A stretch of DNA of 64,000 nt, from the IMG/VR virus record IMGVR_UViG_3300037087_000760, positions 124,001 through 188,000 of that record, one strand, 5' to 3'. Below are positions 22,079 to 45,332 of the stretch, in pieces. Both the position numbers and the translations under genes were made by a program. Below the pieces are notes generated by a model, which had not been told where the DNA came from, did not search any database, and was given only the letters and a program-made list of their open reading frames with translations. Position 1 is the first letter of the stretch. Every line of letters starts with the position of its first letter.

Positions 22079-23851
22079 ATGAATAAGAACATTAAGATAT
22101 CCCTCAACCAGATTAATACCGTAACTGGTGATATCAAAGGAAATTACAGTAAAATATTGGATCTTACCCATAAGGCTATTTCTGATGGAGCGGACATCAT
22201 TGTATTTCCCGAAACATCGGTAACAGGATATTGTGTTGGTTCTCTGTGGGATAATGTAGATTTTATTTTTGAACAGGAAAATTGTATCAAAGATTTGATT
22301 AAAATTATTCCTCATGATAAAGCCCTTATCATTGGTTATATCAGTTATCATGGAGCTAAACCTGATGGTTTCCCATTACTTCGTAATAGTGTCGCTGTTA
22401 TCAATCAAAATAAATTACAGAGGTACGACAAACAACTTCTCGCCAACGCTGATCATCACGAGGATAGAAAATATTTTAAGCCGGGAAAGAAATCCAAAGT
22501 ATTTGAACTTCATTTAAAAGATGGTGAAACCTTAAAGGTAGGTGTTCCTATTTGTGAAGATGCTTGGTATATGAATCATTTCCGTAATATTCCAAAAGAA
22601 ATGATTAATTTGGGGGCCGAAATTTTGATTATTCCCAATCAATCTTATTTCTATTATGGTAAGGATTTACTCCGTGAAAAACTTTTCAGTACCATCGCTA
22701 ATGAGTATCATATTCCAGTTATCACCCTCAATTCTGTTGGAATTGGTGATATTGTAAAGAACATCATCATATATGATGGAAGTTCAATGGTATTCAACGA
22801 AAACGGTGAAAAACTAAGACATTTCAAGAAATTCGGGGAACAATCTGATATTATTGATTTATTTACCAGTAAATCTTCTTTATATCATAATGAATACTTC
22901 GAAAATTATACCACAAAACCAAAATTTGAAGAAATCATTGACGCTATCTGTTTTGAACAGAAAGAAATGTTTCGTCTGTTGGGTATAAAGAAGGCTCAGG
23001 TTCATCTTTCTGGTGGAATTGATAGTATCATAGTCGCGGTTCTTTGTATCCTCTCTATGGGGAAAGAAAACTGTGTTTTTATAACAAATCCGACTTCACT
23101 TAACACTAAAAGTCTGAAACTTGTTCATAAGATGGTTAAAACTCTTGGAGTTGACTTATACACCGATGAATTAGATGAAATTGTTAACGCTCTCAAAAAG
23201 GCTGATACCAAAGCATTCGGAGAAACCACATCCAAAATTCAGGGTGAAATTGAAACAGTGTTTCACGCCGTTGGTAGGACAGTTCAGGGATTAGCGGCCA
23301 CTCATCGTTTCGGTAGTGGTATAGTCGCCACAGGTAATCATACAGAAATCGTTCTTGGTTGGTGTAACTTTCATGACATTGGTTCAATTGGAGTACATTC
23401 AATCATTGGTGATTTAACCAAATTGGAACTCTATCAATTATCTCAGGTATTGAATGATAAATGTCGTGAGATGTACAATGGTGAGAATGTTATTCCTGAG
23501 GAATTGTTTAATGGAAAAGTTCTCCCCGCAGCTGATTTACCAGATAGTAAACTTGACCCATTTGATTATTACATTCAGTCTGGATTATGTGCCGCTTACA
23601 TTCGTGAAAGAAAATCCAGAAATCAGTTGATCGAAGATTTTAAAAATCACAGATTGAATCCTGATTTCTTTCCCTCAAATGTATATGAGAAATATACTAT
23701 GGAACAGTTTATCAAGGAAGTTGAAATCACAATGTCAAGAAGTAGAACTTCCGTATTCAAGGCCGCACAGCATGCACCTATTGTGATATTAAGTCCTCGT
23801 AGTAGGGGGTTCTCAAATCGTGAAACCATTTTGAACAAATATATATCATGA
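22079..23851 (+). CDS. nadE: Glutamine-dependent NAD+ synthetase
   Basis: Nitrilase domain (FPETSVTGY, YDK, ICEDAW) plus synthetase domain (LSGGIDS, TGNHTE, GDLTK). Confidence 0.92.
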   Translation: MNKNIKISLNQINTVTGDIKGNYSKILDLTHKAISDGADIIVFPETSVTGYCVGSLWDNVDFIFEQENCIKDLIKIIPHDKALIIGYISYHGAKPDGFPLLRNSVAVINQNKLQRYDKQLLANADHHEDRKYFKPGKKSKVFELHLKDGETLKVGVPICEDAWYMNHFRNIPKEMINLGAEILIIPNQSYFYYGKDLLREKLFSTIANEYHIPVITLNSVGIGDIVKNIIIYDGSSMVFNENGEKLRHFKKFGEQSDIIDLFTSKSSLYHNEYFENYTTKPKFEEIIDAICFEQKEMFRLLGIKKAQVHLSGGIDSIIVAVLCILSMGKENCVFITNPTSLNTKSLKLVHKMVKTLGVDLYTDELDEIVNALKKADTKAFGETTSKIQGEIETVFHAVGRTVQGLAATHRFGSGIVATGNHTEIVLGWCNFHDIGSIGVHSIIGDLTKLELYQLSQVLNDKCREMYNGENVIPEELFNGKVLPAADLPDSKLDPFDYYIQSGLCAAYIRERKSRNQLIEDFKNHRLNPDFFPSNVYEKYTMEQFIKEVEITMSRSRTSVFKAAQHAPIVILSPRSRGFSNRETILNKYIS

Positions 23852-26858: not shown

Positions 26859-27844
26859 TTTTTTTATTCAATAATATTTCTTATATTTGAGGAAATAAGA
26901 AAATTATGAAGATAAGAATTCAAGTGATTGAAAATAGTAATGAGTCACTATCAATATCCTATACTTTACAGAAACTAACCTTAGTTGGTTGGGTTAATTT
27001 ACAATTATCTGATGTCTGGAAAGAAAAACTTCCCTATTTAGATGGAATTTCACCCATCCGATTCTTCGGAAAGGCCGGGAGTAGTTGTACTGATTCAGAA
27101 AAAGCTAAAACAGTCAAGACTTTTTTGAATAAATCCAAATATCTTGATGATTCTATGTACGAACTAATTTTTGGTTATAAACCTATACATAAGAAAGTTA
27201 GTTATCTCTATTAAGATGAAAAAAGAACCAATTCTTATTACAGAAGATGGTGTACCATACTATGATGAAAATAAGTTGGTCTGGGATACACATGATTTTT
27301 CCTCTGGTGATCCTGCTATAATAGTTAATCCTACATTTTTAGATCAAACACCTGTAAAATATGCTAAAAATATTGATCGAATGTTTTTTCATAGTAAGAA
27401 AAAAGCATTGGAATATATGAAAGATAACATAAGATTTTTAGCTTTGACTGACATTGATAAACTATCAAATGGTATTAATGAAGGAAATATAATTATCAAT
27501 AGAAAAGATTTAATAAAATTACTCAGAAAAAGAATAAACGATGAAAACTGTTAGTATACCAGCTAATGTTCATTTACCCAAGGTCGAAGTCGAAATCGAT
27601 CCACTTGATGTCTTAAAAGAATTAGAGGAAGAATTTTTAGATAAATATGGATGGATTGAAAAAAAAGGAAAGAAATATTTTTTAATGTATCCAGAACTCA
27701 GCTTTGATGAAAAGAGTTATCAAGTACGTCAAGTATCTACGAATGAAGTGAAATTTATTGATGCTATTCATACGATGCAAACTTTTTTACAAGAAAAAAA
27801 TAAGAAATCAAAATCAAAACCAAAATCTTAACAAAAAACTCACA

Positions 27845-29890
27845 ATGAAAAAACTCGCAATTATTTTTATGTCATTACTATTTGTAGTAATGGTTGGTTA
27901 TTCTCAGAAATTCAATCCTGATTCGGGATACAGATTAACAAAGGATACCTTACAATTAAATGAGGTTACTATCAGTTCCTTTCTTCCATACCAAGCAACA
28001 ACCTTGATGCCAATCACTTTTAAGAATTTATATAAAGCTGATTTGGGATTGAAAAATTATGGTCAAGAACCAAGTAGGATTTTAAATACCACTCCATCTA
28101 TAACCACTTATTCGGAATCAGGTGGTGATTGGGGTTATTCTTATATAAGATTAAGAGGTATTGATCAAACCAGAATAAACACCACTCTTAATGGTGTTCC
28201 AATGAATGAACCAGAGGATCAAGGATGTTATTTCTCAAATTATCCTGATTTTCTTCAGTCTGTTGATATGTTACAAATACAGAGAGGAACAGGAATGACT
28301 AAAAATGGGTCAGCCAGTTATGTTGGAAGTATGAATTTCGAATCATATAAACCATCTACATCAAGTGTAGGGGCCTTTTTCGGAGCTGGATCATTCGGAT
28401 CAACCAAAATTTCAATGAATACTGAACAAAATTGGAAAAAAGGTGGGTTATATGCTTCATTTTCTGACCTTGAAACAAAAGGTTATAAATATCATTCTGG
28501 TAATCATTCCAGAAGTGCTTTTCTTGTGGGAAATTATACAACTGGAAGAAATCAATTTAAATTTGTTGGTTTTGCTGGTGAACAAATGAACCAATTAGCT
28601 TGGTTGGGTGTTCCAATAGATAGTATCAATTTAGACCGTAGATATAACACTTGTACCACTCGTGAAAATGATCATTTTAATCAATATCATTTGCAATTTC
28701 ATCACACCTATATTATAGATAATAAATCCAGATTTAATTATTGTGTCTATTATAATTATTTGAATGGTTTCTATACTTATGATGGAATTCATAATGGAAC
28801 ATGGGATACTATATCATCTGGTAAATATAATTTATATGCATATCATCTTTATTCTAACTTCTTAGGTACTAATGTAAACTATTATATTAAACTTGGACCA
28901 TTGGATTTTTATACAGGGGTTAATGGTTCTAAGTATGATAGGGAACATCATGGAACAACAAATGATATCTATACTTACAAAAATACAGGATTCAGAGATG
29001 ATTTAAGTGGATTTGTTAAAGGTATTTTAAACGCTGGAAGTTTCAATTTTTATGGTGATGTTCAATATCGTTATACTACTTTTGTTTATAATGGTGATGT
29101 TTATCTACAACATTTTATTTGGAATTTTCTGAATTATAGTGTTGGTGTTGAATATAAAGCCAAACACAACATCCTTTATTATTCCATTGGTAAAACACAT
29201 CGAGAACCTATTCGTAATGATATGTTTGGTGGTTATGATAATCTATCGTCTGATCCTCTTGGAAAAGCTGTTTTTTATGATTTAAAACCAGAATCAGTAT
29301 TGGATCAGGAATTTGGCTATCGTTATATCATAGGAAATTTAAATTTGAACATCAATCTATATTATATGTTATTCAAAGATGAATTAGTATTAACGGGAGC
29401 TTACGGGCCAACAGGATTACCACTTCATGAAAATGTAGATAACAGTTTCAGGTCAGGATTTGAATTCGATTTTAAATACAGATGGAAATTTGGATTAACA
29501 TTACTTCAAAATGTATCCTATAATTATAGTAAAATAACATGGACAAATAAACAAACAACTCCTGTCTTAACACCAGAATGGCTATCAAATACTGAAGTAA
29601 ATTATAATTACAAATGGTTTATAATCGGTTTGAGTGGTAGGTATCAAAGTTGGTCTTATATTGATCAAAGAAACAACTTCACCATTCCAAGTTTTTATAC
29701 ACTGAATGCTATGATTGGATTAAAATGGTCATGGGGAGAATGGGATATTTATTTGAATAACATAACTGATCAAAAAACTTTATCGAGTGGTATGGTTTCT
29801 GGTGATGGGACTCCTTATAATCAATTTATTCCTCTGTATTATGTGAATGCACCATTTAATTTCTTTACTGGACTTAAATTTAAAATGTAA
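27845..29890 (+). CDS. TonB-dependent outer-membrane receptor (vitamin-uptake type)
   Basis: Signal peptide ending SQ; plug IRLRGIDQTRINTTLNGVPMNEPE, LQIQRG; aromatic beta-barrel ending GLKFKM. Confidence 0.9.
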   Translation: MKKLAIIFMSLLFVVMVGYSQKFNPDSGYRLTKDTLQLNEVTISSFLPYQATTLMPITFKNLYKADLGLKNYGQEPSRILNTTPSITTYSESGGDWGYSYIRLRGIDQTRINTTLNGVPMNEPEDQGCYFSNYPDFLQSVDMLQIQRGTGMTKNGSASYVGSMNFESYKPSTSSVGAFFGAGSFGSTKISMNTEQNWKKGGLYASFSDLETKGYKYHSGNHSRSAFLVGNYTTGRNQFKFVGFAGEQMNQLAWLGVPIDSINLDRRYNTCTTRENDHFNQYHLQFHHTYIIDNKSRFNYCVYYNYLNGFYTYDGIHNGTWDTISSGKYNLYAYHLYSNFLGTNVNYYIKLGPLDFYTGVNGSKYDREHHGTTNDIYTYKNTGFRDDLSGFVKGILNAGSFNFYGDVQYRYTTFVYNGDVYLQHFIWNFLNYSVGVEYKAKHNILYYSIGKTHREPIRNDMFGGYDNLSSDPLGKAVFYDLKPESVLDQEFGYRYIIGNLNLNINLYYMLFKDELVLTGAYGPTGLPLHENVDNSFRSGFEFDFKYRWKFGLTLLQNVSYNYSKITWTNKQTTPVLTPEWLSNTEVNYNYKWFIIGLSGRYQSWSYIDQRNNFTIPSFYTLNAMIGLKWSWGEWDIYLNNITDQKTLSSGMVSGDGTPYNQFIPLYYVNAPFNFFTGLKFKM

Positions 29891-30408: not shown

Positions 30409-30492
30409 GGCTGGGTGGCGGAACTGGTAGACGCGCGGGACTTAAAATCCCGTTCCTGTATGGGAGTGTGGGTTCAATTCCCATCCCGGCTA
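30409..30492 (+). tRNA. tRNA-Leu(TAA), long variable arm
   Basis: Full cloverleaf, loop CT-TAA-AA. Confidence 0.93.
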
Positions 30493-30493
30493 C

Positions 30494-30604
30494 AATCTCT
30501 GACATGGCACCCACTCTAAGGGACCAATACGAAAAGTTTGGGAGCTATCTGGAACAAGGCCGGAAGGCAGAAGGGATGGTAGTGGGGAGCCTAAATCAGA
30601 GATT
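30494..30604 (+). ncRNA. Structured ~111-nt RNA with SRP helix-8-like GCC-GGAA-GGC hairpin
   Basis: 9-bp terminal stem AATCTCTGA/TCAGAGATT; CCCACT/AGTGGG; GCTATC/GATGGT; CAAG-GCC-GGAA-GGC-AGAA. Confidence 0.4.
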
Positions 30605-30669
30605 TTTTAAATATTTTTATCAAATAATTTTTTTTATTCAGAAATTTGACATAATTTTGTAGTCCCTTG

Positions 30670-31072
30670 TTTGATAAAGAGTGTGAGTCAAAGGAAACAA
30701 TAAAGATTTTTAAGTCTTGAGTTCCGGCTGTAAAGGTAGCATACTCTTGTTCTTTGATTTAATGATGAAAAAGTTAGTTCTCGAAGATTAACGGCACCAG
30801 AAAGGTGTACGACACTCGTTGAGAGTGTACGATACTAAGAGGTGTATCAGAATCTTTGAAACGGGTATAAACCCGTTTGGGGAGGCGAGCAGCCGAACCA
30901 AATACAAACTCATATAACTCCGGCCCGCAAGTCGGATGAAAATTGAGTATTCAGTTTTGCGGAACTGTTGGGATAGCTAACATAAATTTATTTGTTGTGG
31001 TGATAAGTCCAAATCGATATGATTTAGTTCAGGAAGTATCGGACTAATTTGGTGAAAAACAAACACAACAAC
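30670..31072 (+). ncRNA. Candidate large ornate ncRNA
   Basis: No ORF of 60 aa or more, GC-elevated, dense hairpins (AAACGGGT/ACCCGTTT, ACACTC/GAGTGT, TGTTGTG/CACAACA), crossing helices at the 5' end. Confidence 0.5.
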
Positions 31073-31074
31073 AC

Positions 31075-31136
31075 GGACAGGTAGCTTAAGAGAGAGCCGT
31101 ATCAACGAGACGGTGGTTTAAACCCACCTCTGTCCA
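31075..31136 (+). ncRNA. 62-nt tRNA-like element lacking a normal anticodon arm
   Basis: Acceptor GGACAGG/TCTGTCC+A, D stem GCT/AGC, T arm GGTGG-TTTAAAC-CCACC; only 14 nt between D and T arms. Confidence 0.6.
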
Positions 31137-31309
31137 CAATATAAAGGGTGCAAAACTTGTTTTAACAATGTTTTTCGGGACGGTTTAGTTAAATCGGTTA
31201 TTCTTAACCAGCCCTTCTTAGAAAATTAGAAGAATCTGATACCCGATGGTGTATAGGATACCCGAAGTACAAGGGATGATCGGTGGCAACACAATCAACT
31301 TCTTTTAAC

Positions 31310-31441
31310 GAGTGTATTAGTGTAACGAAAGCACAGGCTGTTTGATGTTAGAGTAAGTTTTAGACGGCGGTCTTGGTCATTAGATTGACAAAACTGAAAT
31401 ATCGTAGGTCGGATGAGGGTTCAAATCCCTCATACATTCCA
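31310..31441 (+). ncRNA. ~130-nt tRNA-like element with expanded anticodon and variable regions
   Basis: GAGTGTAT/ATACATTC acceptor, D stem GTG/CAC, T arm GAGGG-TTCAAAT-CCCTC, GCTGTTT/AGACGGC stem closing an oversized loop. Confidence 0.55.
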
Positions 31442-31713
31442 AAAGGTGATGTGATGGAATAGTTTTTTCCATCCTGTTTTAAGGAGAGAACATTTGAGGA
31501 TAAAGCGAGCCTACATCACAAACAGGATCACCAAATAAGGTGAGGGAAACAAAGTAGAGTACCTTTTCTTCGGATTGAGGCCTTCGGGCCGAGGGAAATG
31601 ACCTGTTCTCCCTCAACTTTTTTAAAAAACGAAATTAAATTAAACTTTTTGAAAAAAAAGTTCTAAAATAGAAAAAAGAGACTTTATAAGTTAAATATAT
31701 AATAAAAAAACAT

Positions 31714-31784
31714 ATCCAGTAGGAACGTAAGTTCCGTTTTGGGACGCTCAGCGACCCAGAGGGGAAAACTCCCCGCAACTGGAT
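31714..31784 (+). promoter_or_regulatory. Four-way-junction RNA at the 5' end of the rplL-tRNA transcript
   Basis: ATCCAGT/ACTGGAT enclosing GGAAC-GTAA-GTTCC, TGGG..CCCA and GGGG..CCCC hairpins. Confidence 0.5.
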
Positions 31785-31888
31785 AAACTTTTTGAAATGA
31801 TTATGACACAGAACATCCAAAATATGATTATTAATCAGATACCCGGTAAAAATACCGATTGGATGAACTTTGTCTATAACGAATATAG

Positions 31889-31921
31889 AAAAAACCCAAT
31901 CGGAAACGATTGGGTTTTTTT
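31889..31921 (+). terminator. Intrinsic terminator of the attenuator
   Basis: ACCCAATCG-GAAA-CGATTGGGT followed by a T-run. Confidence 0.9.
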
Positions 31922-31952
31922 GTTTTATATGTCCACCATAGTTTTTAACTGG

Positions 31953-31965
31953 TGTTCTTTGAAAT
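31953..31965 (+). promoter_or_regulatory. boxA-like antitermination site
   Basis: TGTTCTTTGAAAT; copies at 32414-32426 (+) and 45905-45917 (-). Confidence 0.6.
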
Positions 31966-32044
31966 AATGATAAATCATATTCGGATTATAAGTTCAAAAC
32001 TGATAATCTGAACATAAAATGTAAATAAAAATAAATTAGAAACT

Positions 32045-32422
32045 ATGGAAGATTTAAAAAAATTAGCGGATGATCTGAGTAATCTCACCGTATTAGAGTG
32101 TTACCAGTTAGCTAAGATAATGAAAGAAGAATACGGAATAGAATCAAATACAAAAATTGTTGGTGTGAATGTATCACCAGTTCCAACTAAGGTAGTTGAA
32201 ATTGAAAAAACAAGTTTTGATGTGATTCTAAAATCAGCAGGAACAACCAACAAACTTGGTGTTATCAAATCCATCAAAGAAATGACAGGACAAAGTTTAT
32301 TGGAAATTAAGAATCTCGTTGATAATGCACCAGCGAAACTAAAAGAAAATGTAAGTAAAGATGAAGCTATGTCTTTACTGAATATTCTGAAAGAATTAGG
32401 TGCAGAAATTGAAGTTCTTTGA
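32045..32422 (+). CDS. rplL: Ribosomal protein bL12 (L7/L12)
   Basis: LSNLTVLE, EKTSFDVILK, KLGVIKSIKEMTG, LVDNAP, LKELGAEIEV. Confidence 0.93.
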   Translation: MEDLKKLADDLSNLTVLECYQLAKIMKEEYGIESNTKIVGVNVSPVPTKVVEIEKTSFDVILKSAGTTNKLGVIKSIKEMTGQSLLEIKNLVDNAPAKLKENVSKDEAMSLLNILKELGAEIEVL

Positions 32423-32449
32423 AAATAATAAAAAATGTAGTAGCGAGTT

Positions 32450-32546
32450 TGAGTGTTACTTCGTAGCTCAACAGTCGAGCATCAATCAGTTAAATTGAAA
32501 GTTGTGGGTGCGATTCCCACCGAACCCGAAAGGGTAATATCACTCA
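32450..32546 (+). ncRNA. tRNA-Asn(GTT)-like RNA with a hairpin inserted in the acceptor stem
   Basis: D arm GCTC/GAGC, loop CA-GTT-AA, T arm GTGGG/CCCAC; acceptor TTCG/CGAA interrupted by CCC-GAAA-GGG then TGAGTG/CACTCA. Confidence 0.65.
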
Positions 32547-32571
32547 ATGATTATCTCTACATTTTTTTAAT

Positions 32572-32649
32572 GGGTGTGTAGCTCAGTAGCGTTAGAGCGC
32601 GACACTGATAATGTCGAGGTCGTAGGTTCAAGTCCTACCATACCCACCA
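32572..32649 (+). tRNA. tRNA-Ile(GAT)
   Basis: Canonical cloverleaf with encoded CCA. Confidence 0.96.
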
Positions 32650-32659
32650 AAAATAACAC

Positions 32660-32741
32660 TGTGTCGTACGCAGCCGATCCTGATAAGATCGAGAACTTGT
32701 AACTGGTGTTGAAAATGTGGGTTCGAATCCCACCGGCACAA
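32660..32741 (+). tRNA. D-armless tRNA-Ile(GAT) with 25-nt variable region
   Basis: TGTGTCG/CGGCACA+A; CGATC-CTGATAA-GATCG; canonical T arm; only 8 nt between acceptor and anticodon stems. Confidence 0.65.
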
Positions 32742-32750
32742 CAAAAATTT

Positions 32751-32822
32751 GGGTTGGTAGTACTAATGAAAAACGGCGGCCTGTTAAGCCGCGAGATGTG
32801 GGTTCAAGTCCCACCCGGCCCT
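32751..32822 (+). tRNA. tRNA-Asn(GTT), weak D arm, U73
   Basis: GCGGC-CTGTTAA-GCCGC; T arm GTGGG-TTCAAGT-CCCAC. Confidence 0.8.
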
Positions 32823-32831
32823 CAATATTAT

Positions 32832-32905
32832 TCCTCAGTAGCTCAGCTGGTTAGAGCATTTGACTGTTAATCAAAGGGTCACAGGTCCAAATCCTGTCTG
32901 GGGAG
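32832..32905 (+). tRNA. tRNA-Asn(GTT)
   Basis: Canonical TCCTCAG/CTGGGGA+G; T loop variant TCCAAAT. Confidence 0.93.
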
Positions 32906-32910
32906 CAAAA

Positions 32911-32987
32911 TTCGGAATGTTTGTCTGTGATTGGGTGCACCACACAGATAATAAAGGAAAAATGTGGTTCAATTCCACCATTCCGAG
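32911..32987 (+). ncRNA. tRNA-like element with acceptor and T arm but a single long hairpin replacing D and anticodon arms
   Basis: TCGGAATG/CATTCCGA; TTGTCTGTG/CACAGATAA; GTGG-TTCAATT-CCAC. Confidence 0.55.
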
Positions 32988-32995
32988 CAAAAATA

Positions 32996-33087
32996 GGGAG
33001 TGTAGCTGATTTGGTTTAGCGGCAGACCGTTAATCTGTGACTGAAAATATTGAAATAAAGTTGGTTCGACCCCATCCTCTCCCGCCA
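32996..33087 (+). tRNA. tRNA-Asn(GTT) with 21-nt AT-rich variable region
   Basis: GCAGA-CCGTTAA-TCTGT; G73 plus CCA encoded; C33. Confidence 0.7.
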
Positions 33088-33095
33088 GTACATAT

Positions 33096-33175
33096 TGTGG
33101 TGTATCCCCCATGTCTTATAAACATGCATTAAAAGGGTAATAGCGTGTATGTGGGTTCGAGTCCCACCACCACAA
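33096..33175 (+). tRNA. D-armless tRNA-Ile(TAT) with 24-nt variable region
   Basis: TGTGGTG/CACCACA+A; CATGT-CTTATAA-ACATG; canonical T arm. Confidence 0.65.
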
Positions 33176-33180
33176 CAAAT

Positions 33181-33252
33181 GGTCGGGTAAGCTAACGGTT
33201 AAACTGGATGTCTTATACACATCTTTTAAGAGTTCGAATCTCTTCCTGACTA
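33181..33252 (+). tRNA. tRNA-Ile(TAT)
   Basis: GATGT-CTTATAC-ACATC; full cloverleaf. Confidence 0.85.
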
Positions 33253-33257
33253 CAAAT

Positions 33258-33333
33258 GGCGAGATAGCTCAGACGGTTTTAGAGCGTCGGATTCATAACC
33301 CGGAGGTCGAGGGTTCAACTCCCTCTCTCGCTA
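33258..33333 (+). tRNA. tRNA-Met(CAT), elongator type
   Basis: Canonical cloverleaf, loop TT-CAT-AA. Confidence 0.93.
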
Positions 33334-33341
33334 CCCAAAAT

Positions 33342-33413
33342 AGTCCTATGGCGTAACGCGAAGCGTGACTCCCCTTGAAGGAGATGGTACTGGTTCGAAT
33401 CCAGTTAGGACTG
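33342..33413 (+). tRNA. tRNA-Gln(TTG), C33 variant
   Basis: AGTCCTA/TAGGACT+G; loop CC-TTG-AA. Confidence 0.8.
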
Positions 33414-33418
33414 CAAAT

Positions 33419-33504
33419 ATCAATGTGAACGGAATGGTTATCGTAGAGGTCTCATAAGCCTTTCAACTCGTTGAGTTGTGGTGGTTCGAATCCACTCATT
33501 GATA
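33419..33504 (+). tRNA. tRNA(CAT), Met or Ile2, with long variable arm
   Basis: GAGGT-CTCATAA-GCCTT; variable hairpin TCAAC/GTTGA. Confidence 0.75.
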
Positions 33505-33510
33505 CAAAAT

Positions 33511-33581
33511 AGTCCTGTGGTGTAACGGTAGCATGCGAGCCTTTGAAGCTTTGGGTACAGATTCGAATTCTGTCAGGACTG
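33511..33581 (+). tRNA. tRNA-Gln(TTG)
   Basis: AGTCCTG/CAGGACT+G; loop CT-TTG-AA. Confidence 0.88.
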
Positions 33582-33587
33582 CAAAAT

Positions 33588-33660
33588 TGTTCTGTCGTAT
33601 AATTGGCAGTACAGCACCCTCTGAAGGTGTATGGTGTAGGTTCGAGTCCTACTGGAACAG
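33588..33660 (+). tRNA. tRNA-Gln(CTG)
   Basis: GCACC-CTCTGAA-GGTGT; G73. Confidence 0.88.
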
Positions 33661-33665
33661 CAAAT

Positions 33666-33737
33666 GGTTCTGTGGTGTAATGCGTAGCACGAGTGATTCT
33701 GAATCACTTGGTTAAGGTTCGAATCCTTACAGAACTA
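33666..33737 (+). tRNA. tRNA-Gln(CTG), A73
   Basis: AGTGA-TTCTGAA-TCACT; full cloverleaf. Confidence 0.85.
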
Positions 33738-33738
33738 C

Positions 33739-34053
33739 ATGAAAAAGGACATAAGAAAGACATTTCGTAAAGAGGTATTCACCAGAGATAAGTATACTTG
33801 TAAAGGATGTGATCAAAAACTTGATGAATCTGAATTGGATGCACATCACATCACTGACCGCAATGAAATGCCAAATGGTGGATATGTGAAAGAGAACGGT
33901 ATAACTCTTTGTAAGAAAGATTGTCATATAAAAGCTGAAAAATTTCATATAACAGATGGAAAAGAATGGGTAGAGGGATTTCATCCAGATGACTTATACG
34001 AGAAGATTGATTCATCTAAGGGGAAGGCTGTTTTAATGTCTCAAATTATTTAG
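33739..34053 (+). CDS. HNH endonuclease
   Basis: RDKYTCKGC, LDAHHI, ENGITLC...CHIKAE. Confidence 0.85.
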   Translation: MKKDIRKTFRKEVFTRDKYTCKGCDQKLDESELDAHHITDRNEMPNGGYVKENGITLCKKDCHIKAEKFHITDGKEWVEGFHPDDLYEKIDSSKGKAVLMSQII

Positions 34054-34419
34054 AATAATGAGAAATAATTTTTTTATTGATTTAATTTTTGTATCTTTGT
34101 ATTGTATAAATTTAAATTATATGAAACAGTTTATTAAACCATCAACATTCAAAGAAAGAAAAAAAAGACCAGATAAAACGAAAGTTGATGAATTTATCGA
34201 AAAGTTCAACAAACTTATAAAAAAGGGAGAATTAGAGGCTAATGATGTACTCAATAAACTCCCATACTTAAATGAATCTGAGTTTAATCTGGCTGTTGCT
34301 ATTGCTCGTGAAAATGGTTGGCAATTAACTCAATTTGAAGATAATTACAACACGACATCTTACCAACTTACAGAAATAAAACTTTCTGTTTAAAAAACAA
34401 TATATAATCATTGTTGTAT

Positions 34420-34490
34420 TGTCCTATGGTGTAATGGCAACACGTGGGTTTTTGGAGCCTTAGTTCTAAGTTCGAATCTTAGTAGGACAA
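34420..34490 (+). tRNA. tRNA-Gln(TTG), solitary
   Basis: TGTCCTA/TAGGACA; loop TT-TTG-GA; weak anticodon stem; AATATATA box at 34399. Confidence 0.75.
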
Positions 34491-34585
34491 CTCTATCACA
34501 ATATACAAGAAGTCAACTACGATGGGAATCGAGGCCAACACGACAAGGATCAAACTTCGTTATAAAGATATTGTGGATTTTTTCT

Positions 34586-37236: not shown

Positions 37237-38103
37237 TTAGATTCCTAATAAATGTTTTGCTAGTGAAACCTCTGGGATATGTTGAAAATAGTACATTACT
37301 CCGAATAAAGATAGAGCCAATGAAAAGAAGAAAAACAAAGCCCATCCAATTTGTTTGTGGGTCATACTTTGATAATTATGTAATTTTTTCCATTCGAACC
37401 AAATTTCGATAACTCCCAGAATCATAAGTAAAGCAAATAATCCTATTTTTAACCAGAAAAACAGAACAGTTGAAGCTAATAGTCCAAATGATAAAATTCC
37501 CAATCCCAACCAAGATTTTAATGAGAAACCAATTGATTTAAATATTCTTCCACCATCCAATGGACTTATTGGTAAAAGGTTGAATAAATTTACAAAGGCC
37601 ATCCATCCGGCTATCGCCGCGAATAATGGATTCAGAGTAATAAAATATACTATTCCAGTAATAATAGTTAGGGCAAATCCCCAAACTGGTCCCATTATAG
37701 CAACAACGAATTCCGTATTTCTTGATTTGAAATCATTCTCAATAACAGCGGCACCACCAATGAATGGTATAAAATAAATGCCCTTAACTTTTAATCCATG
37801 TCTTTTGGCAGCCCATATATGACCAGATTCATGAACAAATAAACAAACCATGATAGCTATGGCGAATGTCCAAGTAGTGAGAAATGCATAACTCACAACA
37901 CTTCCAACGGCCAAACCTATTTTTACCACCTTTGCCCCTTTTAATAATTTTGTTACAACTGGAATGGCTTTAGATCCAATTTTTCCAAGAGCCACAAAAA
38001 ATCCTACAAAGATATTTTTCTTCTTCGGTTTTTCTTCAATCTTTGGTTGATAATTATAAGATGCTTTTACAAAAATTTTTTCTGGTTTTTCTCCAATCAT
38101 CAT
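37237..38103 (-). CDS. Site-2 (M50) intramembrane metalloprotease
   Basis: HESGH, FIPFIGG, MGP, NLLPISPLDGGR. Confidence 0.92.
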   Translation of the reverse strand: MMIGEKPEKIFVKASYNYQPKIEEKPKKKNIFVGFFVALGKIGSKAIPVVTKLLKGAKVVKIGLAVGSVVSYAFLTTWTFAIAIMVCLFVHESGHIWAAKRHGLKVKGIYFIPFIGGAAVIENDFKSRNTEFVVAIMGPVWGFALTIITGIVYFITLNPLFAAIAGWMAFVNLFNLLPISPLDGGRIFKSIGFSLKSWLGLGILSFGLLASTVLFFWLKIGLFALLMILGVIEIWFEWKKLHNYQSMTHKQIGWALFFFFSLALSLFGVMYYFQHIPEVSLAKHLLGI

Positions 38104-38714
38104 AATGTAACTTTTTTGAGGTTATAAATTTTTATCCAGTTTATAAATCCATAAATTGCCGTTCCTGTAAAAATCAATGATTCTATAGCGACAAGGTATA
38201 TTCCACTAAATCCAAACAAAAAAACACAAACTATATCACTTATTATCCAGACTAACCAAGATTCAATGTATTTAAAGGATAGTAGGTTGACACCAAGGAT
38301 ACTGAGAACTGTTACTGTGATGTCTAAGAATAGGTTTGCTGACTGTTTTTCTACTGGAAGTATCTGTCGAACTATGAAATCAATAACAAAAATGGAAATT
38401 ATAGTAATTATACTCCAAATTAGACGCTGTTTATTCGTCAACCATCTTAATCCCTTACCTTCGTTTTTATCTGTTTTTCTCCAATAAAATATGGCAACAA
38501 TACAGATGTAAGTAAAGTAAATTTGTAGAATGGCATTAGCGTAAAGTGAATTATTCCAGAAAAGAAAGAAGAAACACACTTGACCGATAATACTACAAAT
38601 CCAATTCCACCAATTAGCTTTTGTGGCAAATATAACGGAAACAAAATTGAAAATCGATCCGATCAATTCCAAGTAAGTTAAATGATAACCATATATTGTT
38701 AAGGCTGTTTCCAT
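38100..38714 (-). CDS. pnuC: Nicotinamide riboside transporter PnuC
   Basis: Multi-pass membrane protein; LYANAILQ, KYIESWLVWIISD, YGFINW. Confidence 0.88.
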   Translation of the reverse strand: METALTIYGYHLTYLELIGSIFNFVSVIFATKANWWNWICSIIGQVCFFFLFWNNSLYANAILQIYFTYICIVAIFYWRKTDKNEGKGLRWLTNKQRLIWSIITIISIFVIDFIVRQILPVEKQSANLFLDITVTVLSILGVNLLSFKYIESWLVWIISDIVCVFLFGFSGIYLVAIESLIFTGTAIYGFINWIKIYNLKKVTL

Positions 38715-41818: not shown

Positions 41819-42808
41819 ATGACTAACAAAAAAGATAAAAAAATAGGACTTGTATTTGGAAAGTTCATGCCCCTTCATAATGGACACATGGCCTTGATTC
41901 GATTTGCACAATCTCAGTGTGATAAACTATATGTATTGTTATGTGAGGCTAATGATGAACCAATATGTGGAAAAATTCGATTAGGATGGTTATTGGACAC
42001 ATTCAAAGATGATTTGAACATAGAAGTGAGAATTACTGATGTTCAATTACCATTAGTTCCCTATTCATCTAAATTAATAGCTAAAATGTGGGCCAAATTT
42101 TTCAAGGAAGAATTTCCTGATGTGAATATTCTATTTACTTCGGAAAGATATGGTGATTTCACAGCAGAATTCATGGGTATAAAACATATACTTTTTGATA
42201 ATGACAGAGAAGAAGTTTTTGTATCAGCCACCAAGATTCGTAATCATCCACTCATTTATTGGGATTATATTCCCGACATTGTAAAACCGTACTTTGTTAA
42301 GAAAATTTGTATTTGTGGAACAGAATCAACGGGAAAAAGTATATTAACCGAAAAACTTGCTAAGAGATTTCATACTAACTTTGTTCCAGAATGGGGTAGA
42401 ACTTTATGTCCGTCTACAACTGAATGTACCATAGATATAATTAAACAAATCGGTAAATCCCACGCTACTGACATTCACAATAAAATACAATTCTCACATA
42501 AATTTTTATTTTCAGATACCGACCTGAATACAACAAAAATGTATTCCTATTTCTTATTCAATGAAATACCGAAATTTGATGATTGGATTGAACAAGAAAA
42601 TAAGTTCGATTTGTACATTTTTCTTGAAAACGATGCCCCTTTTATTCAGGATGGAACACGACTGACAAAAGAAAGAAGGGATGAACTACGAGATTACCAT
42701 TACGACTACCTTATATCTCAAGGATGTAAAGTTGAAATTGTAACTGGTAGTGATTGGGAAATCAGGTATGAAAAAGCTGTCAGAATAATTGAGGAAAATT
42801 TCGGATAA
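41819..42808 (+). CDS. nadR: NadR-type NMN adenylyltransferase / ribosylnicotinamide kinase
   Basis: GKFMPLHNGH, FTSERYG, VSATKIR, GTESTGKS, EWGR, DTD, QDGTR. Confidence 0.92.
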   Translation: MTNKKDKKIGLVFGKFMPLHNGHMALIRFAQSQCDKLYVLLCEANDEPICGKIRLGWLLDTFKDDLNIEVRITDVQLPLVPYSSKLIAKMWAKFFKEEFPDVNILFTSERYGDFTAEFMGIKHILFDNDREEVFVSATKIRNHPLIYWDYIPDIVKPYFVKKICICGTESTGKSILTEKLAKRFHTNFVPEWGRTLCPSTTECTIDIIKQIGKSHATDIHNKIQFSHKFLFSDTDLNTTKMYSYFLFNEIPKFDDWIEQENKFDLYIFLENDAPFIQDGTRLTKERRDELRDYHYDYLISQGCKVEIVTGSDWEIRYEKAVRIIEENFG

Positions 42809-42813: not shown

Positions 42814-43104
42814 ATGAGAAATTACAAATTAGAAAAATTACAAGCCGGAGAAAGTTTCGTTACCAGTGAAAAAGGTAATTCCATGTCACCAATTATTAAG
42901 TCGGGACAAAAACATAAACTTGTTCCCGCCACTTGGAGAGATGTAGATGTAGATGATATAGTCTATTGTAAAGTCAAAGGAAACTTCTACACTCACCTTG
43001 TAAAAGCAAAAAATGAAGATAAGGGTTGCTTAATAGGTAACAACAAAGGTGGAGTTAACGGATGGACTAAACAAGTCTATGGTAAGGTTGTAAAAATCCT
43101 TTAA
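42814..43104 (+). CDS. S24/S26 peptidase-like small protein
   Basis: KGNSMSPII.SG. Confidence 0.5.
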   Translation: MRNYKLEKLQAGESFVTSEKGNSMSPIIKSGQKHKLVPATWRDVDVDDIVYCKVKGNFYTHLVKAKNEDKGCLIGNNKGGVNGWTKQVYGKVVKIL

Positions 43105-44360
43105 ATATAAATATTCAGAATTTCATTCAGTTTAATTTTGGTTTCCTCATTCAGTGATTTCCCCTTATTTTCATTATACAGAATCATAAAGGAACTTACC
43201 ACTTTATTGAATTTGAAACTATCCGTATAACCAAATACAGTTTCCTTAAACTTTTCAATATCAACAGTTTCCTTACCAGTTCTTGACATCCATTCATCCC
43301 ATTTTTTGAAGAATCTGATGATACCATTGATGTTCTGGTCTGACCATTGACCACCATCGAAATAATGTCCGATGAACATCAGATAAAACCTCAGAACCTT
43401 TGGATCATAGTTATCTGGATTAACAATATTTCCTTTACTTTTGGCCATCTTGATTCCATTATTCAGAATCATTCCCTGATGCACCACTTTTTTAAAAGGT
43501 TCTTCCTCACTGATCATCCCAATATCATACAGGAACATATTAATAAAACGAGCATATATCAGGTGCATGCAAGCGTGTTCACTTCCCCCGATGTACAGAT
43601 CAACTTGTTTATATTTATCTTTACTACACAGTTCATTTTCGTTGTACGAATCACAATAACGGATAAAATAGAAACTACTATCTACGAAAGTATCCAGAGT
43701 ATCAGTCTCACCTTCAATTGGAATAGGACATCCCCAACTTCTTTGTCTACTGACACACCAATCATGTTGATTCTCCAGCCAATCTCTTTGAGAATTGATT
43801 GTTTTCTTTGGGTAATCAATCCAATCCAGATTTTTTATCAGTCGGTCTTTATATTCGGTGATTTTAAAATACCATTGTTCCATTTGACGAATTTCAATGG
43901 TCGTATTACATCTATCACATTTACCATCTTTGACCTGTTCACGAGCCAGAACAGTTCCACAACTTGGACACCAATTTACTTCACCCCAAGCTTTGTAAGC
44001 CAGTCCATGTTCTTTCAGTTTGATAAATATCCATTGTGTCCACTTCTGGTAAGATGGATCTGAAGTAATTACTTTTTCTTCAAAAGAAGTGTCCATTCTT
44101 TCCATCTGTTTACGGAAATTCTCAATGTTTTCATAGGTAACTTCTCTGGGATCTCTATTGACTGATTTGGCGTAATTTTCAGCTGGAAGTCCAAAGGAAT
44201 CATACCCAAACGGTTGAAAAACTTTAACTCCTTTATATCTTTGGTATCGACAATAACTGTCTACGATAGCGTAATTATAATAATGTCCGATGTGCAGTCC
44301 GTTTCCGCTCGGATAAGGAAACATGACAACCACCATTTTTTCATTTTTTATGTCGTTCAT
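43101..44360 (-). CDS. leuS: Minimal leucyl-tRNA synthetase (no CP1 editing domain, no C-terminal domain)
   Basis: MFPYPSG, HIGH, DSFGLPAEN, CPSC/CDRC, DWCVSRQRSWG, ETDTLDTF, GGSEHA, KMAKSKGN. Confidence 0.92.
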   Translation of the reverse strand: MNDIKNEKMVVVMFPYPSGNGLHIGHYYNYAIVDSYCRYQRYKGVKVFQPFGYDSFGLPAENYAKSVNRDPREVTYENIENFRKQMERMDTSFEEKVITSDPSYQKWTQWIFIKLKEHGLAYKAWGEVNWCPSCGTVLAREQVKDGKCDRCNTTIEIRQMEQWYFKITEYKDRLIKNLDWIDYPKKTINSQRDWLENQHDWCVSRQRSWGCPIPIEGETDTLDTFVDSSFYFIRYCDSYNENELCSKDKYKQVDLYIGGSEHACMHLIYARFINMFLYDIGMISEEEPFKKVVHQGMILNNGIKMAKSKGNIVNPDNYDPKVLRFYLMFIGHYFDGGQWSDQNINGIIRFFKKWDEWMSRTGKETVDIEKFKETVFGYTDSFKFNKVVSSFMILYNENKGKSLNEETKIKLNEILNIYI

Positions 44361-45120
44361 TGTCTTTTAATTTGTTTGAGAAATGTTCAATTGAGATATT
44401 ATGTTTTTTGATTGTTTTATAAATAAGACTTCTATTACTTTCGTTATATTCCATATTTAAATTTTTCATAATATCTCTATAAGATTTTGATTTAGAAATA
44501 ATCCCTTTAAAAAGATTAATATCATAATCGAAATAATCATAATTTCTTTTATTTGTGAAATCTTTCCAATCATCTTTTTCAATTATTTCCTTATCTTCGT
44601 ATCTAAAATAACACCCACCAGCCGTCCCTTTCAATTGACAACTAAATTTAATTTGTTGTCTAAAAATACCTGTTTCTCTTTCAGCTCCTCGAAGGCTAAT
44701 GAATTTTTTTAAAGGAGTAAAATTTTTATCATACATTATAATTGATTTCTTATTTGGATTGGATATTTTCATTAGTTTTTTACTTTTATCAGAATGTTTT
44801 TTTCCTGTCCAATCTACACCATCTCCACCATCTGTACTATTCTTCAATCTAAATCCCCAGCATTTAAATTGAGAAATCCAATATCTTTCTAATGAATCAA
44901 TATTATTTTTATCACCGATATCAAGTATTTCTATTATTGGTGAAAGATTTTTATTTTTGAGATATTTTAACCATTTATTTTTTCTTGTCCAAGGTTCTTG
45001 ACGGATACTCCAATTTGACATATGTCCCCTCAATCTTTTTTCTAAATTTTTGGTCTTACCTACATATTTTATAATTTTATCTTCTGGGTCTGTTAATGTA
45101 TAAATATAAAATTCCATCAT
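44341..45120 (-). mobile_element. Free-standing GIY-YIG homing endonuclease with NUMOD-type DNA-binding motifs
   Basis: YIYTL...YVGKT...R...H, LERYWI, NSTDGGDG, GKKHSDKSK, FISLRGAERETG. Confidence 0.88.
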
Positions 45121-45169
45121 AGATTTTTATTTCTATATATAAAAATTTATGTGTAATGTTTCATAGTTG

Positions 45170-45243
45170 TAACCCCACCCGGACTTGAACCGAGATATTT
45201 AGTTTCTAAAACTAACGCCGCTAACCAATTAGGCCATGGGGTC
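45170..45243 (-). tRNA. tRNA-Leu(TAG) with short variable loop
   Basis: TTAGT-TTTAGAA-ACTAA; 4-nt variable loop; A73. Confidence 0.8.
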
Positions 45244-45253
45244 ATTATTTTAG

Positions 45254-45327: not shown

Positions 45328-45332
45328 TTTTG

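What the first reader, a model, noticed from the sequence alone, without database searches (positions are those of the whole stretch)
32655..33175. Two D-armless tRNA-Ile genes sharing a re-wired fold
Ile(GAT) 32660-32741 and Ile(TAT) 33096-33175 have perfect acceptor, anticodon and T arms but only 7-8 nt where the D arm belongs, plus a 24-25 nt variable region. Although their sequences differ, both allow the same two extra pairings. Nucleotides 8-12 pair with the variable region (TACG:TGTA; TATCC:GGGTA), and the 5' leader pairs with the variable region (AACAC:GTGTT; TACAT:GTGTA). This suggests a conserved permuted topology rather than decay. Each has a canonical sibling with the same anticodon.
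Basis: partly seen in the sequence, partly recalled or inferred. Interest (0 to 1): 0.8.

Follow-up and report, generated by a model that had tools for sequence, protein, structure and literature searches.

The report
Phage tRNAs with a relocated D-arm
The two odd isoleucine tRNA genes are not decayed copies: they belong to a large, almost entirely unannotated family of phage tRNAs (Ile and Arg) in which half of the D-stem and the D-loop sit after the anticodon arm, which appears to be a tRNA wiring not previously described.

Summary
Both elements are in the sequence as described. Each has a 7-bp acceptor, a 5-bp/7-nt anticodon arm (GAU, UAU) and a canonical T arm. Only 8 and 7 nt stand where the D arm belongs, and 25 and 24 nt precede the T arm.

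They belong to a family of at least 86 distinct sequences, from more than 100 IMG/VR phage contigs and about 90 GenBank phages (Streptomyces, Caulobacter, Microbacterium, Maribacter, crAss-like, huge phages). Almost none is annotated.

A covariance model built only from other phages scores A at 85.9 bits (E=4.5e-21) and B at 63.7 bits (E=5e-15). The best canonical tRNA scores 38.8 bits.

Covariation establishes a 3-bp helix between the 5' linker and the "variable region" (A 32671-73:32697-99; B 33106-08:33135-37). It is followed by U-A-R-N(1-3)-G-G-N. I read this as the D-stem 5' strand plus D loop moved downstream. An R15:Y48-like pair also covaries.

Only Ile (GAU/UAU/CAU) and Arg anticodons occur. 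"Position 20" is A in 23/23 Arg members and U in 50/55 Ile members. The discriminator is A in all Ile members. This fits charging by ArgRS and IleRS.

There is no RNA evidence. I found no description in Rfam 15 or the searched literature.

The parts
32660..32741 (+). Element A: tRNA-Ile(GAU) gene with relocated D-arm, 82 nt including discriminator A
   Evidence: Model R1, built without window sequences: 85.9 bits, E=4.5e-21, all 21 modelled pairs standard. Segment coordinates checked.
32667..32674 (+). A: 8-nt linker replacing the D arm. U8-A9 at 32667-68. X strand CAG at 32671-73, read as the equivalent of positions 23-25. One nucleotide (32674), read as the position-26 equivalent.
   Evidence: T8 and A9 are invariant in 86 family members. 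The X columns covary with the Y columns.
32675..32691 (+). A: anticodon arm, 5 bp plus loop CUGAUAA; anticodon GAU at 32682-84
32692..32699 (+). A: 5-nt spacer (32692-96) and Y strand UUG (32697-99) pairing with X; read as the equivalent of positions 10-12
   Evidence: Helix columns 12-14/41-43 of A2 are 91.5% paired, and all three pairs show changes on both sides. RNAalifold predicts the helix unprompted.
32700..32716 (+). A: relocated D-loop-like segment U-A-A-C-U-G-G-U (32700-07), connector (32708-15), and U at 32716 as partner of A32702 (15:48-like pair)
   Evidence: The U-A-R..GG motif is conserved. Column pair 46:63 of A2 is A-U 59, G-C 20, other 7. The nucleotide after GG is U in 50/55 Ile members.
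32717..32741 (+). A: T arm (GUGGG / UUCGAAU / CCCAC), acceptor 3' strand, discriminator A
33096..33175 (+). Element B: tRNA-Ile(UAU) gene with relocated D-arm, 80 nt
   Evidence: R1: 63.7 bits, E=5.1e-15, no non-standard pair. Rfam tRNA 35.3 bits with the D arm deleted.
33103..33109 (+). B: 7-nt linker UAUCCCC; X strand CCC at 33106-08
33110..33126 (+). B: anticodon arm, loop CUUAUAA; anticodon UAU at 33117-19
33127..33150 (+). B: 8-nt spacer (33127-34); Y strand GGG (33135-37); D-loop-like UAAUAGCG (33138-45), where AGCG replaces the UGG of all relatives; connector; U at 33150
   Evidence: The subgroup with the 8-nt spacer was also found in other contigs (L011 type, L077), where it has UGG.
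33151..33175 (+). B: T arm, acceptor 3' strand, discriminator A
32572..32649 (+). Canonical tRNA-Ile(GAU), 10 nt upstream of A. Context only, not a family member.
   Evidence: ARAGORN; Rfam 70.8 bits; R1 only 30.1 bits
33181..33253 (+). Canonical tRNA-Ile(UAU), 5 nt downstream of B. Context only.
   Evidence: ARAGORN; Rfam 53.3 bits

Best explanation
A and B are genuine phage tRNA genes of a conserved structural class in which the D domain is rewired.

Architecture (5' to 3'):
- Acceptor 5' strand, then U8-A9 and one or two nucleotides.
- A 3-nt strand X, which runs after one further nucleotide straight into the anticodon arm.
- A 3-8-nt spacer after the anticodon arm.
- A 3-nt strand Y that pairs with X.
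- U-A-R-N(1-3)-G-G-N, a short connector, and a pyrimidine that pairs with R.
- A normal T arm and the acceptor 3' strand.

Inferred mapping onto the standard tRNA numbering: X = 23-25, Y = 10-12, and the following nucleotides = 13-21. In other words, the segment 10-21 (D-stem 5' strand plus D loop) has been moved from before the anticodon arm to after it.

Inferred consequences: the X:Y helix still stacks on the anticodon stem. U8:A14, R15:Y48 and the G18G19/T-loop elbow can still form, so the L shape is kept.

Inferred function: the RNAs are cut out of the tRNA array like their neighbours, receive CCA, are charged by IleRS and read AUY (A) and AUA (B). Arg members would be charged by ArgRS through the relocated A20.

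What is shown: family membership, the helices, the covarying 15:48-like pair, and identity nucleotides that track the anticodon.
What is inferred: the 3-D equivalence, processing, charging and decoding.
What is unknown: the advantage over a canonical tRNA. My leading guess is insensitivity to a host or competitor factor that reads the D arm, such as a tRNA-directed nuclease.
For: Family size:
- 86 distinct members were retrieved by two pattern scans of IMG/VR plus a structural scanner.

Structure:
- On a structure-blind MAFFT alignment, 94.9% of cells pair, against 60% when shuffled and about 40% when slid by 1-3 columns.
- The X:Y helix is 91.5% paired. Its middle pair is G-C 36, C-G 24, A-U 20, U-A 5.
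- The 15:48-like pair is A-U 59, G-C 20.
- RNAalifold predicts X:Y without being told.
- In an all-against-all mutual-information scan, the top 16 column pairs are all pairs of this structure.

Membership of A and B:
- Model R1, built without window sequences, scores A at 85.9 bits and B at 63.7 bits. The best canonical tRNA in the window scores 38.8 bits.

Identity nucleotides:
- The nucleotide after GG is A in 23/23 Arg-anticodon members, U in 50/55 Ile members and U in 8/8 CAU members.
- The discriminator is A in 63/63 Ile plus CAU members.
- These match the bacterial identity sets: Arg A20, C35, U/G36; Ile A73, U20 (PMC9976931).
- The anticodon middle base co-varies with position 20 and with the discriminator.
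- On a tree built without the anticodon and D-loop columns, the amino-acid label needs only 4 changes (27.9 when shuffled), while the anticodon needs 17.

Genomic setting:
- Members sit inside tRNA arrays (median 10 canonical tRNAs per fetched locus), with tRNA-like spacing.
- EGole and Mildred21 differ at 9 positions. Four of these form two compensatory base-pair swaps in the anticodon stem, and the rest lie in loops.
- Ile codons make up 9.2% of the window's ORF codons, with AUA at 30 per 1000.
Against: - There is no RNA evidence. The three peat metatranscriptomes of the source study, held only as contigs, do not cover A or B. This is uninformative rather than negative.
- Single-sequence folding does not give the X:Y helix. 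A scores -16.8 against an MFE of -21.4 kcal/mol, and B -19.6 against -23.5.
- B has AGCG where every relative has UGG (the G18G19 equivalent). It also has a competing fold that destroys its anticodon arm.
- Both A and B are redundant with canonical tRNAs of the same anticodon, in the window and in Streptomyces phage EGole.
- The 3-D mapping rests on textbook tRNA geometry, not on a model or a structure.
- Charging and decoding are untested.
Confidence: 0.72

Rival explanations
1. tRNA-like decoys or regulators. On this view the RNAs fold as described but do not serve in translation. They would, for example, soak up a tRNA-directed nuclease or toxin, an aaRS or a modification enzyme, while the canonical sibling does the decoding.
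For: - A canonical tRNA with the same anticodon is encoded next to A and B and in EGole.
- The carrier phages have RNA-repair genes: RNA ligase, polynucleotide kinase, a Ro-like protein and an RlaP-like nucleotidyltransferase right upstream in Streptomyces phages. This points to conflicts over tRNA.
- Phage tRNAs are known to counter tRNA-cleaving defences (PMC10264068 and PMC11464382, titles and abstracts).
Against: - Everything needed for charging and for EF-Tu or ribosome use is kept: the 7-bp acceptor, the T arm, U33, A37 and the discriminator. A20/U20 tracks the anticodon.
- 82 of 108 instances have no canonical tRNA of the same anticodon in the fetched locus.
- No dedicated protein partner is conserved next to them. 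The only widespread neighbour is a homing-endonuclease-like ORF.
Confidence: 0.15
2. Decayed pseudo-tRNAs. On this view A and B are remnants of canonical Ile tRNAs that lost the D arm and gained junk in the variable region.
For: - The same array holds clearly degenerate tRNA-like pieces at 32460-32524, 31075-31136 and 32912-32987.
- B lacks the GG doublet.
- ARAGORN and Rfam with default filters do not call them.
Against: - Homologs with the same architecture occur in unrelated phages of Actinomycetota, Bacteroidota, Alphaproteobacteria and others, with compensatory changes in every helix.
- A matches the family model better than most seed members do.
- A and B share no stem sequences with their siblings.
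Confidence: 0.03
3. One reading: a fold that also needs the 5' leader paired with the variable region, that is, a precursor-specific or leader-retaining topology.
For: AACAC:GUGUU (A) and UACAU:GUGUA (B) are present in the window.
Against: - Leaders differ freely among members.
- In A's register 49.8% of cells pair, and all five pair in 1 of 86 members.
- Best leader complementarity is 3.93 pairs, against 4.09 for shuffled leaders.
- A and B use different leader positions (-5..-1 against -7..-3).
- The variable-region partner (GUGUU) overlaps the conserved G19/N20 segment.
Confidence: 0.02
4. Gene-level permutation resolved by RNA processing. As with circularly permuted or split tRNA genes, the transcript would be cut and rejoined into a canonical cloverleaf.
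For: Carrier phages often encode RNA ligase and polynucleotide kinase.
Against: - Restoring the canonical order would need excision of an internal 12-nt segment and its reinsertion upstream of the anticodon arm. That means three breaks and three joins, not one circularisation.
- No bulge-helix-bulge or intron-like motif is conserved at the junctions.
- The 5' and 3' ends already form a normal acceptor stem.
Confidence: 0.01

Closest known systems
D-armless mitochondrial tRNAs of animals (mt-tRNA-Ser(AGY) of mammals; D-arm-lacking tRNA-Ser of nematodes)
   Same: - No D hairpin, only a short connector between the acceptor and anticodon stems.
[quoted passage not shown]
- The molecules still work as tRNAs.
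   Different: - The phage family keeps a covarying 3-bp D-stem equivalent, a full D-loop motif (A14, R15, G18G19, N20) placed after the anticodon arm, the 15:48 pair and a canonical T loop. The mitochondrial ones have lost these and are flexible.
- Ile and Arg, not Ser.
- Bacterial viruses, not organelles.
- About 77-82 nt, not about 60.
Canonical bacterial and phage tRNA (Rfam RF00005)
   Same: Acceptor, anticodon arm, T arm, U8, A14, R15:Y48, G18G19, discriminator and identity nucleotides.
   Different: - Strand order of the D domain: there is no D hairpin.
- 19-27 nt (up to 35 in one member) lie between the anticodon and T stems.
- RF00005 misses A and scores B at 35.3 bits, against 48-71 for neighbouring tRNAs.
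Class II tRNAs (Leu, Ser, Tyr) with a long variable arm
   Same: A long stretch between the anticodon stem and the T stem.
   Different: - In class II the stretch forms its own hairpin and the D arm is present.
- Here the stretch pairs with the 5' linker and carries the D-loop motif. No internal hairpin is conserved, apart from one member, L127:11715-11803.
Circularly permuted and split tRNA genes (red alga Cyanidioschyzon, Archaea; PMC3218864, listed)
   Same: The order of tRNA segments in the gene departs from the standard order.
   Different: In those cases processing restores a canonical mature tRNA. Here the mature RNA itself is inferred to have the new connectivity.
allo-tRNAs with 8/4 or 9/3 acceptor/T branches (PMC5389517, listed)
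   Same: Non-canonical cloverleaf variants found by mining metagenomes. Its abstract places them in certain bacteria and begins a mention of their phages, which is cut off.
   Different: Those alter helix lengths of the acceptor branch. D-arm connectivity is standard.

Membership tests
Relocated-D-arm phage tRNA family (defined here; model R1) | Match to a covariance model built from members of other phages | tested here: met
   A 85.9 bits, B 63.7 bits. Verified members score 51-85 bits, and canonical tRNAs score at most 38.8 bits.
Relocated-D-arm phage tRNA family (defined here; model R1) | 3-bp helix between linker nucleotides just 5' of the anticodon arm and the region 3' of it | tested here: met
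   A CAG:UUG, B CCC:GGG. Family covariation.
Relocated-D-arm phage tRNA family (defined here; model R1) | U-A-R-N(1-3)-G-G-N after the helix, with R paired to the pyrimidine before the T stem | tested here: inconclusive
   A meets it fully (UAACUGGU ... U). B has U-A-A and the A:U pair but AGCG in place of UGG.
Relocated-D-arm phage tRNA family (defined here; model R1) | Identity nucleotides matching the anticodon (Ile: U after GG, A73) | tested here: met
   A has U at 32707 and A at 32741. B has A at 33175, but its position-20 equivalent is ambiguous.
Canonical tRNA (Rfam RF00005) | D arm hairpin between positions 10 and 25 | tested here: not met
   Only 8 and 7 nt are present. Rfam aligns B with 15 model positions replaced by 4 nt.
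Canonical tRNA (Rfam RF00005) | Score at or above the family's gathering threshold (29 bits) | tested here: inconclusive
   A gets no hit even at E<=10. B gets 35.3 bits, but only with permissive filters.
Canonical tRNA (Rfam RF00005) | Processed, CCA-ended, aminoacylated, used on the ribosome | not testable with these tools
   The metatranscriptome contigs are uninformative.
Animal mitochondrial D-armless tRNA | Loss of the D-loop/T-loop elbow motifs (G18G19, T-Psi-C) and a reduced core | tested here: not met
   By inspection of the alignment, nearly all 86 members keep a GG doublet; B is the clear exception. Columns of the T loop are invariant.
Class II tRNA | Self-paired variable arm plus a normal D arm | tested here: not met
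   The consensus fold has no hairpin in that region and no D arm.
tRNA pseudogene | No selection on structure: no compensatory changes among homologs | tested here: not met
   20 of 21 pairs show changes on both sides. There are two compensatory swaps between two cultured phages.
Y RNA-like (YrlA), tmRNA and viral tRNA-like elements in Rfam | Score at the Rfam gathering threshold | tested here: not met
   Only sub-threshold scraps on the T arm.

The most novel reading that the evidence does not exclude
The relocated-D-arm tRNAs are a phage-specific tRNA architecture that is fully active in translation with the host's IleRS, ArgRS, EF-Tu and ribosome. On this reading they are kept alongside canonical copies because the rewired core makes them invisible to host or rival factors that grip the D arm or core, such as tRNA-cleaving defence nucleases, toxins or turnover pathways. 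They would then be a structural counter-defence rather than an anticodon-loop one.
Probability: 0.3. Interest if true: 0.92.

Novelty: new variant of a known kind. Interest (0 to 1): 0.85.

Why it matters
- The cloverleaf connectivity is among the most conserved features in biology. The known natural exceptions are truncations in animal mitochondria or changes of helix length. A family that keeps the tertiary-interaction nucleotides but re-threads the chain would show that the L shape can be reached through a different strand order.
- It would define which parts of the D domain IleRS, ArgRS, RNase P, the CCA-adding enzyme, EF-Tu and the ribosome really need.
- Standard tRNA finders miss these genes. 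tRNA counts and codon-supply analyses of many phages are therefore incomplete, including about 90 GenBank genomes of cultured phages. Some of these regions are currently annotated as hypothetical proteins or as the wrong tRNA.
- Cultured carriers exist, so the question can be tested directly.
- The scaffold could also be useful as a naturally divergent tRNA chassis.

Tried and rejected
- ARAGORN and Rfam at default settings do not see A or B. This is a limit of the tools, not evidence against the genes.
- Single-sequence RNAfold, with and without leaders, gives unrelated folds with weak z-scores of -0.8 to -2.1. Rejected as a guide, because the family consensus fold differs.
Sliding partners by +/-1 drops pairing to about 42-44%, and members such as UAUCUCC/GAGUA fit only the shifted register.
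- BLAST of A against GenBank phages gave only T-arm scraps. Homologs had to be found by structure-aware patterns instead.
- Cellular genomes: 120 pattern hits were almost all tRNA-Ser, tmRNA and other canonical RNAs. Only four were family members, all on MAG contigs, and the two longest fetched stretches carry 14-17 tRNAs in 6-8 kb. I therefore reject a cellular origin.
- Expression: the RNA runs of the source study show only cross-matches from other organisms' tRNAs.
- A conserved protein partner was sought by clustering ORFs within 4 kb of members. Only homing-endonuclease-like ORFs recur widely. An aaRS in the window turned out to be LeuRS-like, not IleRS.
- Eight literature searches and reading within three papers found no description of such tRNAs.

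Full report
**What is there**

The window is about 30% G+C and phage-like. It carries two tRNA arrays, at 30409-34491 on the + strand and 45169-45990 on the - strand. It also encodes ribosomal protein L7/L12, a LeuRS-like protein, NAD-salvage genes and homing endonucleases.

It is identical over the array to IMG/VR contig UViG_3300037087_000760 (211 kb; L024). It occurs in peat metagenomes, where one run has the whole stretch in a 116-kb contig. Its nearest GenBank relatives, at only about 72% identity over the tRNA region, are the 630-735-kb uncultured phages LR756501-03 and LR745206.

- a 7-bp acceptor;
- U-A plus a few nucleotides in place of the D arm (8 and 7 nt in all);
- a 5-bp anticodon stem with a 7-nt loop (CUGAUAA, CUUAUAA);
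- 25 and 24 nt before a canonical T arm;
- discriminator A.

They sit 10 nt after a canonical tRNA-Ile(GAU) and 5 nt before a canonical tRNA-Ile(UAU) respectively, spaced like ordinary members of the array. ARAGORN calls neither. Rfam's tRNA model misses A altogether. It finds B at 35.3 bits only under permissive filters, with the D arm deleted.

**They belong to a large family**

- A scan of IMG/VR for CUGAUAA followed 26-38 nt later by a T arm returned 107 stretches. Most had the same layout: a 7-8-nt linker starting with UA, and 19-27 nt before the T arm.
- A second scan, independent of the anticodon, used the motif GUA-R-NN-GG followed by a T arm.
- After removing duplicates there are 86 distinct sequences.
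- GenBank phages carry them too. About 80-90 Streptomyces phages of the Stanwilliamsviridae have one, for example Jay2Jay, Samisti12, EGole, Mildred21 and Coruscant.
- Other carriers are Caulobacter phages CcrColossus and CcrPW, Microbacterium phage Zooman, Maribacter phage Panino, the crAss-like phages cr130_1 and Kehishuvirus 'tikkala', and the huge phages LR756500 and LR756502. Model scores for representatives are 65-80 bits.
- Nearly all are unannotated. EGole calls its copy tRNA-Leu(UUA), while Zooman and Panino lay hypothetical CDSs over theirs.

In the collection of one genome per species, 120 pattern hits were almost all tRNA-Ser, tmRNA or other canonical RNAs. Only four were family members, all on MAG contigs. 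Two of the fetched stretches carry 14-17 tRNAs in 6-8 kb, which is a phage-like feature.

**The structure is under selection**

- On a MAFFT alignment made without structural information (A2), the proposed structure pairs in 94.9% of cells. Shuffling gives 60% and sliding gives about 40%.
- The new helix joins the three linker nucleotides that lie one position before the anticodon stem (X) to three nucleotides 3-8 nt after that stem (Y). It is 91.5% paired, with changes on both sides at all three pairs. The middle pair is G-C 36, C-G 24, A-U 20, U-A 5.
- RNAalifold finds this helix on its own.
- In an all-against-all mutual-information scan, the 16 best column pairs are all pairs of this structure. 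The X:Y middle pair ranks second overall.
- A covariance model built from the 84 members of other contigs, excluding the window and L024, scores A at 85.9 bits (E=4.5e-21) and B at 63.7 bits (E=5.1e-15), with no non-standard pair. The best canonical tRNA in the window scores 38.8 bits.
- Between two cultured phages (EGole and Mildred21) the gene differs at 9 positions. Four make two compensatory swaps in the anticodon stem and the rest lie in loops.

**What the rewiring is (inference from standard tRNA geometry)**

Directly after Y comes U-A-R-N(1-3)-G-G-N, then 4-12 nt, then a pyrimidine just before the T stem. R and that pyrimidine covary as A:U (59) or G:C (20), exactly as the 15:48 Levitt pair does in ordinary tRNAs. 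U8 and A9 are invariant.

If Y is read as positions 10-12, the following nucleotides are 13, A14, R15, 16-17, G18, G19 and 20, which is the normal order. X, which runs 5'-to-3' into the anticodon stem after one nucleotide, then corresponds to 23-25 plus 26.

So the block 10-21 has been moved from upstream to downstream of the anticodon arm. Compared with a canonical tRNA:
- the helix on top of the anticodon stem is the same;
- the break in the canonical coaxial stack between 44 and 10 is sealed by the spacer;
- A9 connects to 23, next to which it lies in canonical tRNA (where it forms a base triple with the 12:23 pair);
- the end of the D loop connects to 48, a neighbouring layer of the core.

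This keeps U8:A14, 15:48 and the GG/T-loop elbow available. I could not build or test a 3-D model. Nearest-neighbour energies alone do not favour the helix: A scores -16.8 against an MFE of -21.4 kcal/mol, and B -19.6 against -23.5.

**Evidence that they are chargeable tRNAs**

- Only seven anticodons occur: GAU, UAU and CAU, plus ACG, UCG, UCU and CCU.
- The nucleotide after GG (position 20) is A in 23/23 Arg-anticodon members, U in 50/55 Ile members and U in 8/8 CAU members.
- The discriminator is A in all 63 Ile and CAU members, and U, A or G in Arg members.
- These are the bacterial identity elements: A20, C35 and U/G36 for ArgRS; A73 and U20 among those for IleRS (PMC9976931).
- Position 35 co-varies with position 20 and with the discriminator.
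- On a tree built without the anticodon and D-loop columns, 22 of 23 Arg members form one group. The amino-acid label needs 4 changes (27.9 when shuffled), while anticodons change at least 17 times.
- So anticodons drift within an amino-acid class, but identity is kept. A UAU-to-UCU change plus U20-to-A20 would suffice for the Ile/Arg switch, which may explain why only these two classes are seen.
- Members lie in tRNA arrays (median 10 canonical tRNAs per fetched locus). 26 of 108 have a canonical tRNA of the same anticodon within the fetched flank.
- The window's ORFs use Ile at 9.2% of codons.

**What is not supported**

- The leader pairing. Leaders are unrelated across members, and pairing is at chance level.
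- The proposed register of the linker pairing.
- Recent duplication from the siblings. No stem similarity is visible, and A's nearest relative is a permuted tRNA in contig L077, where a B-like UAU member follows it 7 nt later.

**Caveats**

- There is no RNA evidence.
- B is the most divergent member of its subgroup. It has AGCG instead of UGG at the G18G19 site, and a competing fold. It may be a variant or may be starting to decay.
- Both pattern scans that built the family required a GGGUUCRAWUCCC T arm, and one required GAU, so the family's true breadth and anticodon range are lower bounds.
- Absence from the literature is based on the searchable library only and on Rfam 15.

**Verdict**

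The finding extends well beyond the window, to a widespread and overlooked phage tRNA architecture for Ile and Arg. The functional advantage is unknown. I consider translation-competent tRNAs the most likely reading (about 0.7), with a decoy role as the main rival.

Noticed in passing
window 32912-32987 (+): tRNA-like element with a perfect 7-bp acceptor and a T arm. In place of an anticodon arm it has a 6-bp hairpin with a 13-nt loop (z = -3.9). This is followed by a UAAU..GGA..U stretch that resembles the family's relocated D loop. Model R1 does not hit it.
   Followed up: partly
window 31075-31136 (+): 62-nt mini tRNA-like with acceptor, D-like arm and T arm (loop UUUAAAC) but no anticodon arm. 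Neither ARAGORN nor Rfam calls it.
   Followed up: no
window 31311-31439 (+): 129-nt tRNA-like, Rfam tRNA 30.5 bits, with a roughly 55-nt insertion. It lies in a 1.4-kb ORF-poor stretch (30660-32040) with G+C-rich, structured-looking segments and no Rfam match.
   Followed up: no
window 32460-32524, 32996-33087, 33419-33505, 45996-46068(-): Further non-standard tRNAs:
- a truncated Asn-like copy with A33;
- a tRNA-Asn(GUU) with a normal D arm plus about 20 unpaired nt before the T arm;
- an 87-nt tRNA(CAU);
- an uncalled tRNA-like element next to tRNA-Tyr.
   Followed up: no
window 30409-34491 and 45169-45990: Many tRNAs share an anticodon or amino acid: Gln x5 (UUG x3, CUG x2), Asn(GUU) x3 and Leu x8. 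The genome appears to collect divergent isodecoders rather than fill codon gaps.
   Followed up: no
window 43101-44360 (-) and 44341-45120 (-): A 419-aa LeuRS-like catalytic core (TIGR00396 381 bits, below its cutoff of 548; far shorter than the 843-position bacterial LeuRS model) lies directly beside the Leu tRNA array. A GIY-YIG homing-endonuclease ORF overlaps its start in another frame.
   Followed up: partly
window 32045-32422 (+): Phage-encoded ribosomal protein L7/L12 (both Pfam domains), immediately upstream of the tRNA array.
   Followed up: partly
window 11396-12616, 22079-23851, 38100-38714, 41819-42808, 27758-29890: NAD salvage set: NAPRTase, glutamine-dependent NAD synthetase, PnuC-like NMN transporter and NadR-like NMN adenylyltransferase. 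There is also a TonB-dependent-receptor-like ORF.
   Followed up: partly
L127:11632-11885; L077:5182-5347; L120:3917-5578: Permuted tRNAs occur in clusters:
- GAU, UAU and CAU in tandem in L127, where the UAU copy carries an extra hairpin between the GG and the T stem;
- A-like GAU and B-like UAU 7 nt apart in L077;
- three Arg types (UCU, CCU, UCG) in L120.
   Followed up: partly
L111:1966-2487 (EGole), L355:1-386 (Mildred21): In Streptomyces phages an RlaP-like nucleotidyltransferase gene (annotated as tRNA nucleotidyltransferase in Mildred21) ends 13-14 nt before the permuted tRNA-Ile. The same genomes encode a Ro-like protein, RNA ligase, polynucleotide kinase and a tmRNA.
   Followed up: partly
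L307:1867-1947: A MAG contig carrying a family member also encodes a predicted ochre-suppressor tRNA (anticodon UUA) within a 14-tRNA array.
   Followed up: no
A3 columns 15 and 37: The nucleotide between X and the anticodon stem co-varies with the second spacer nucleotide (C-G 43, G-U 8, G-A 8). This may be a further pair analogous to 26:44/45.
   Followed up: no
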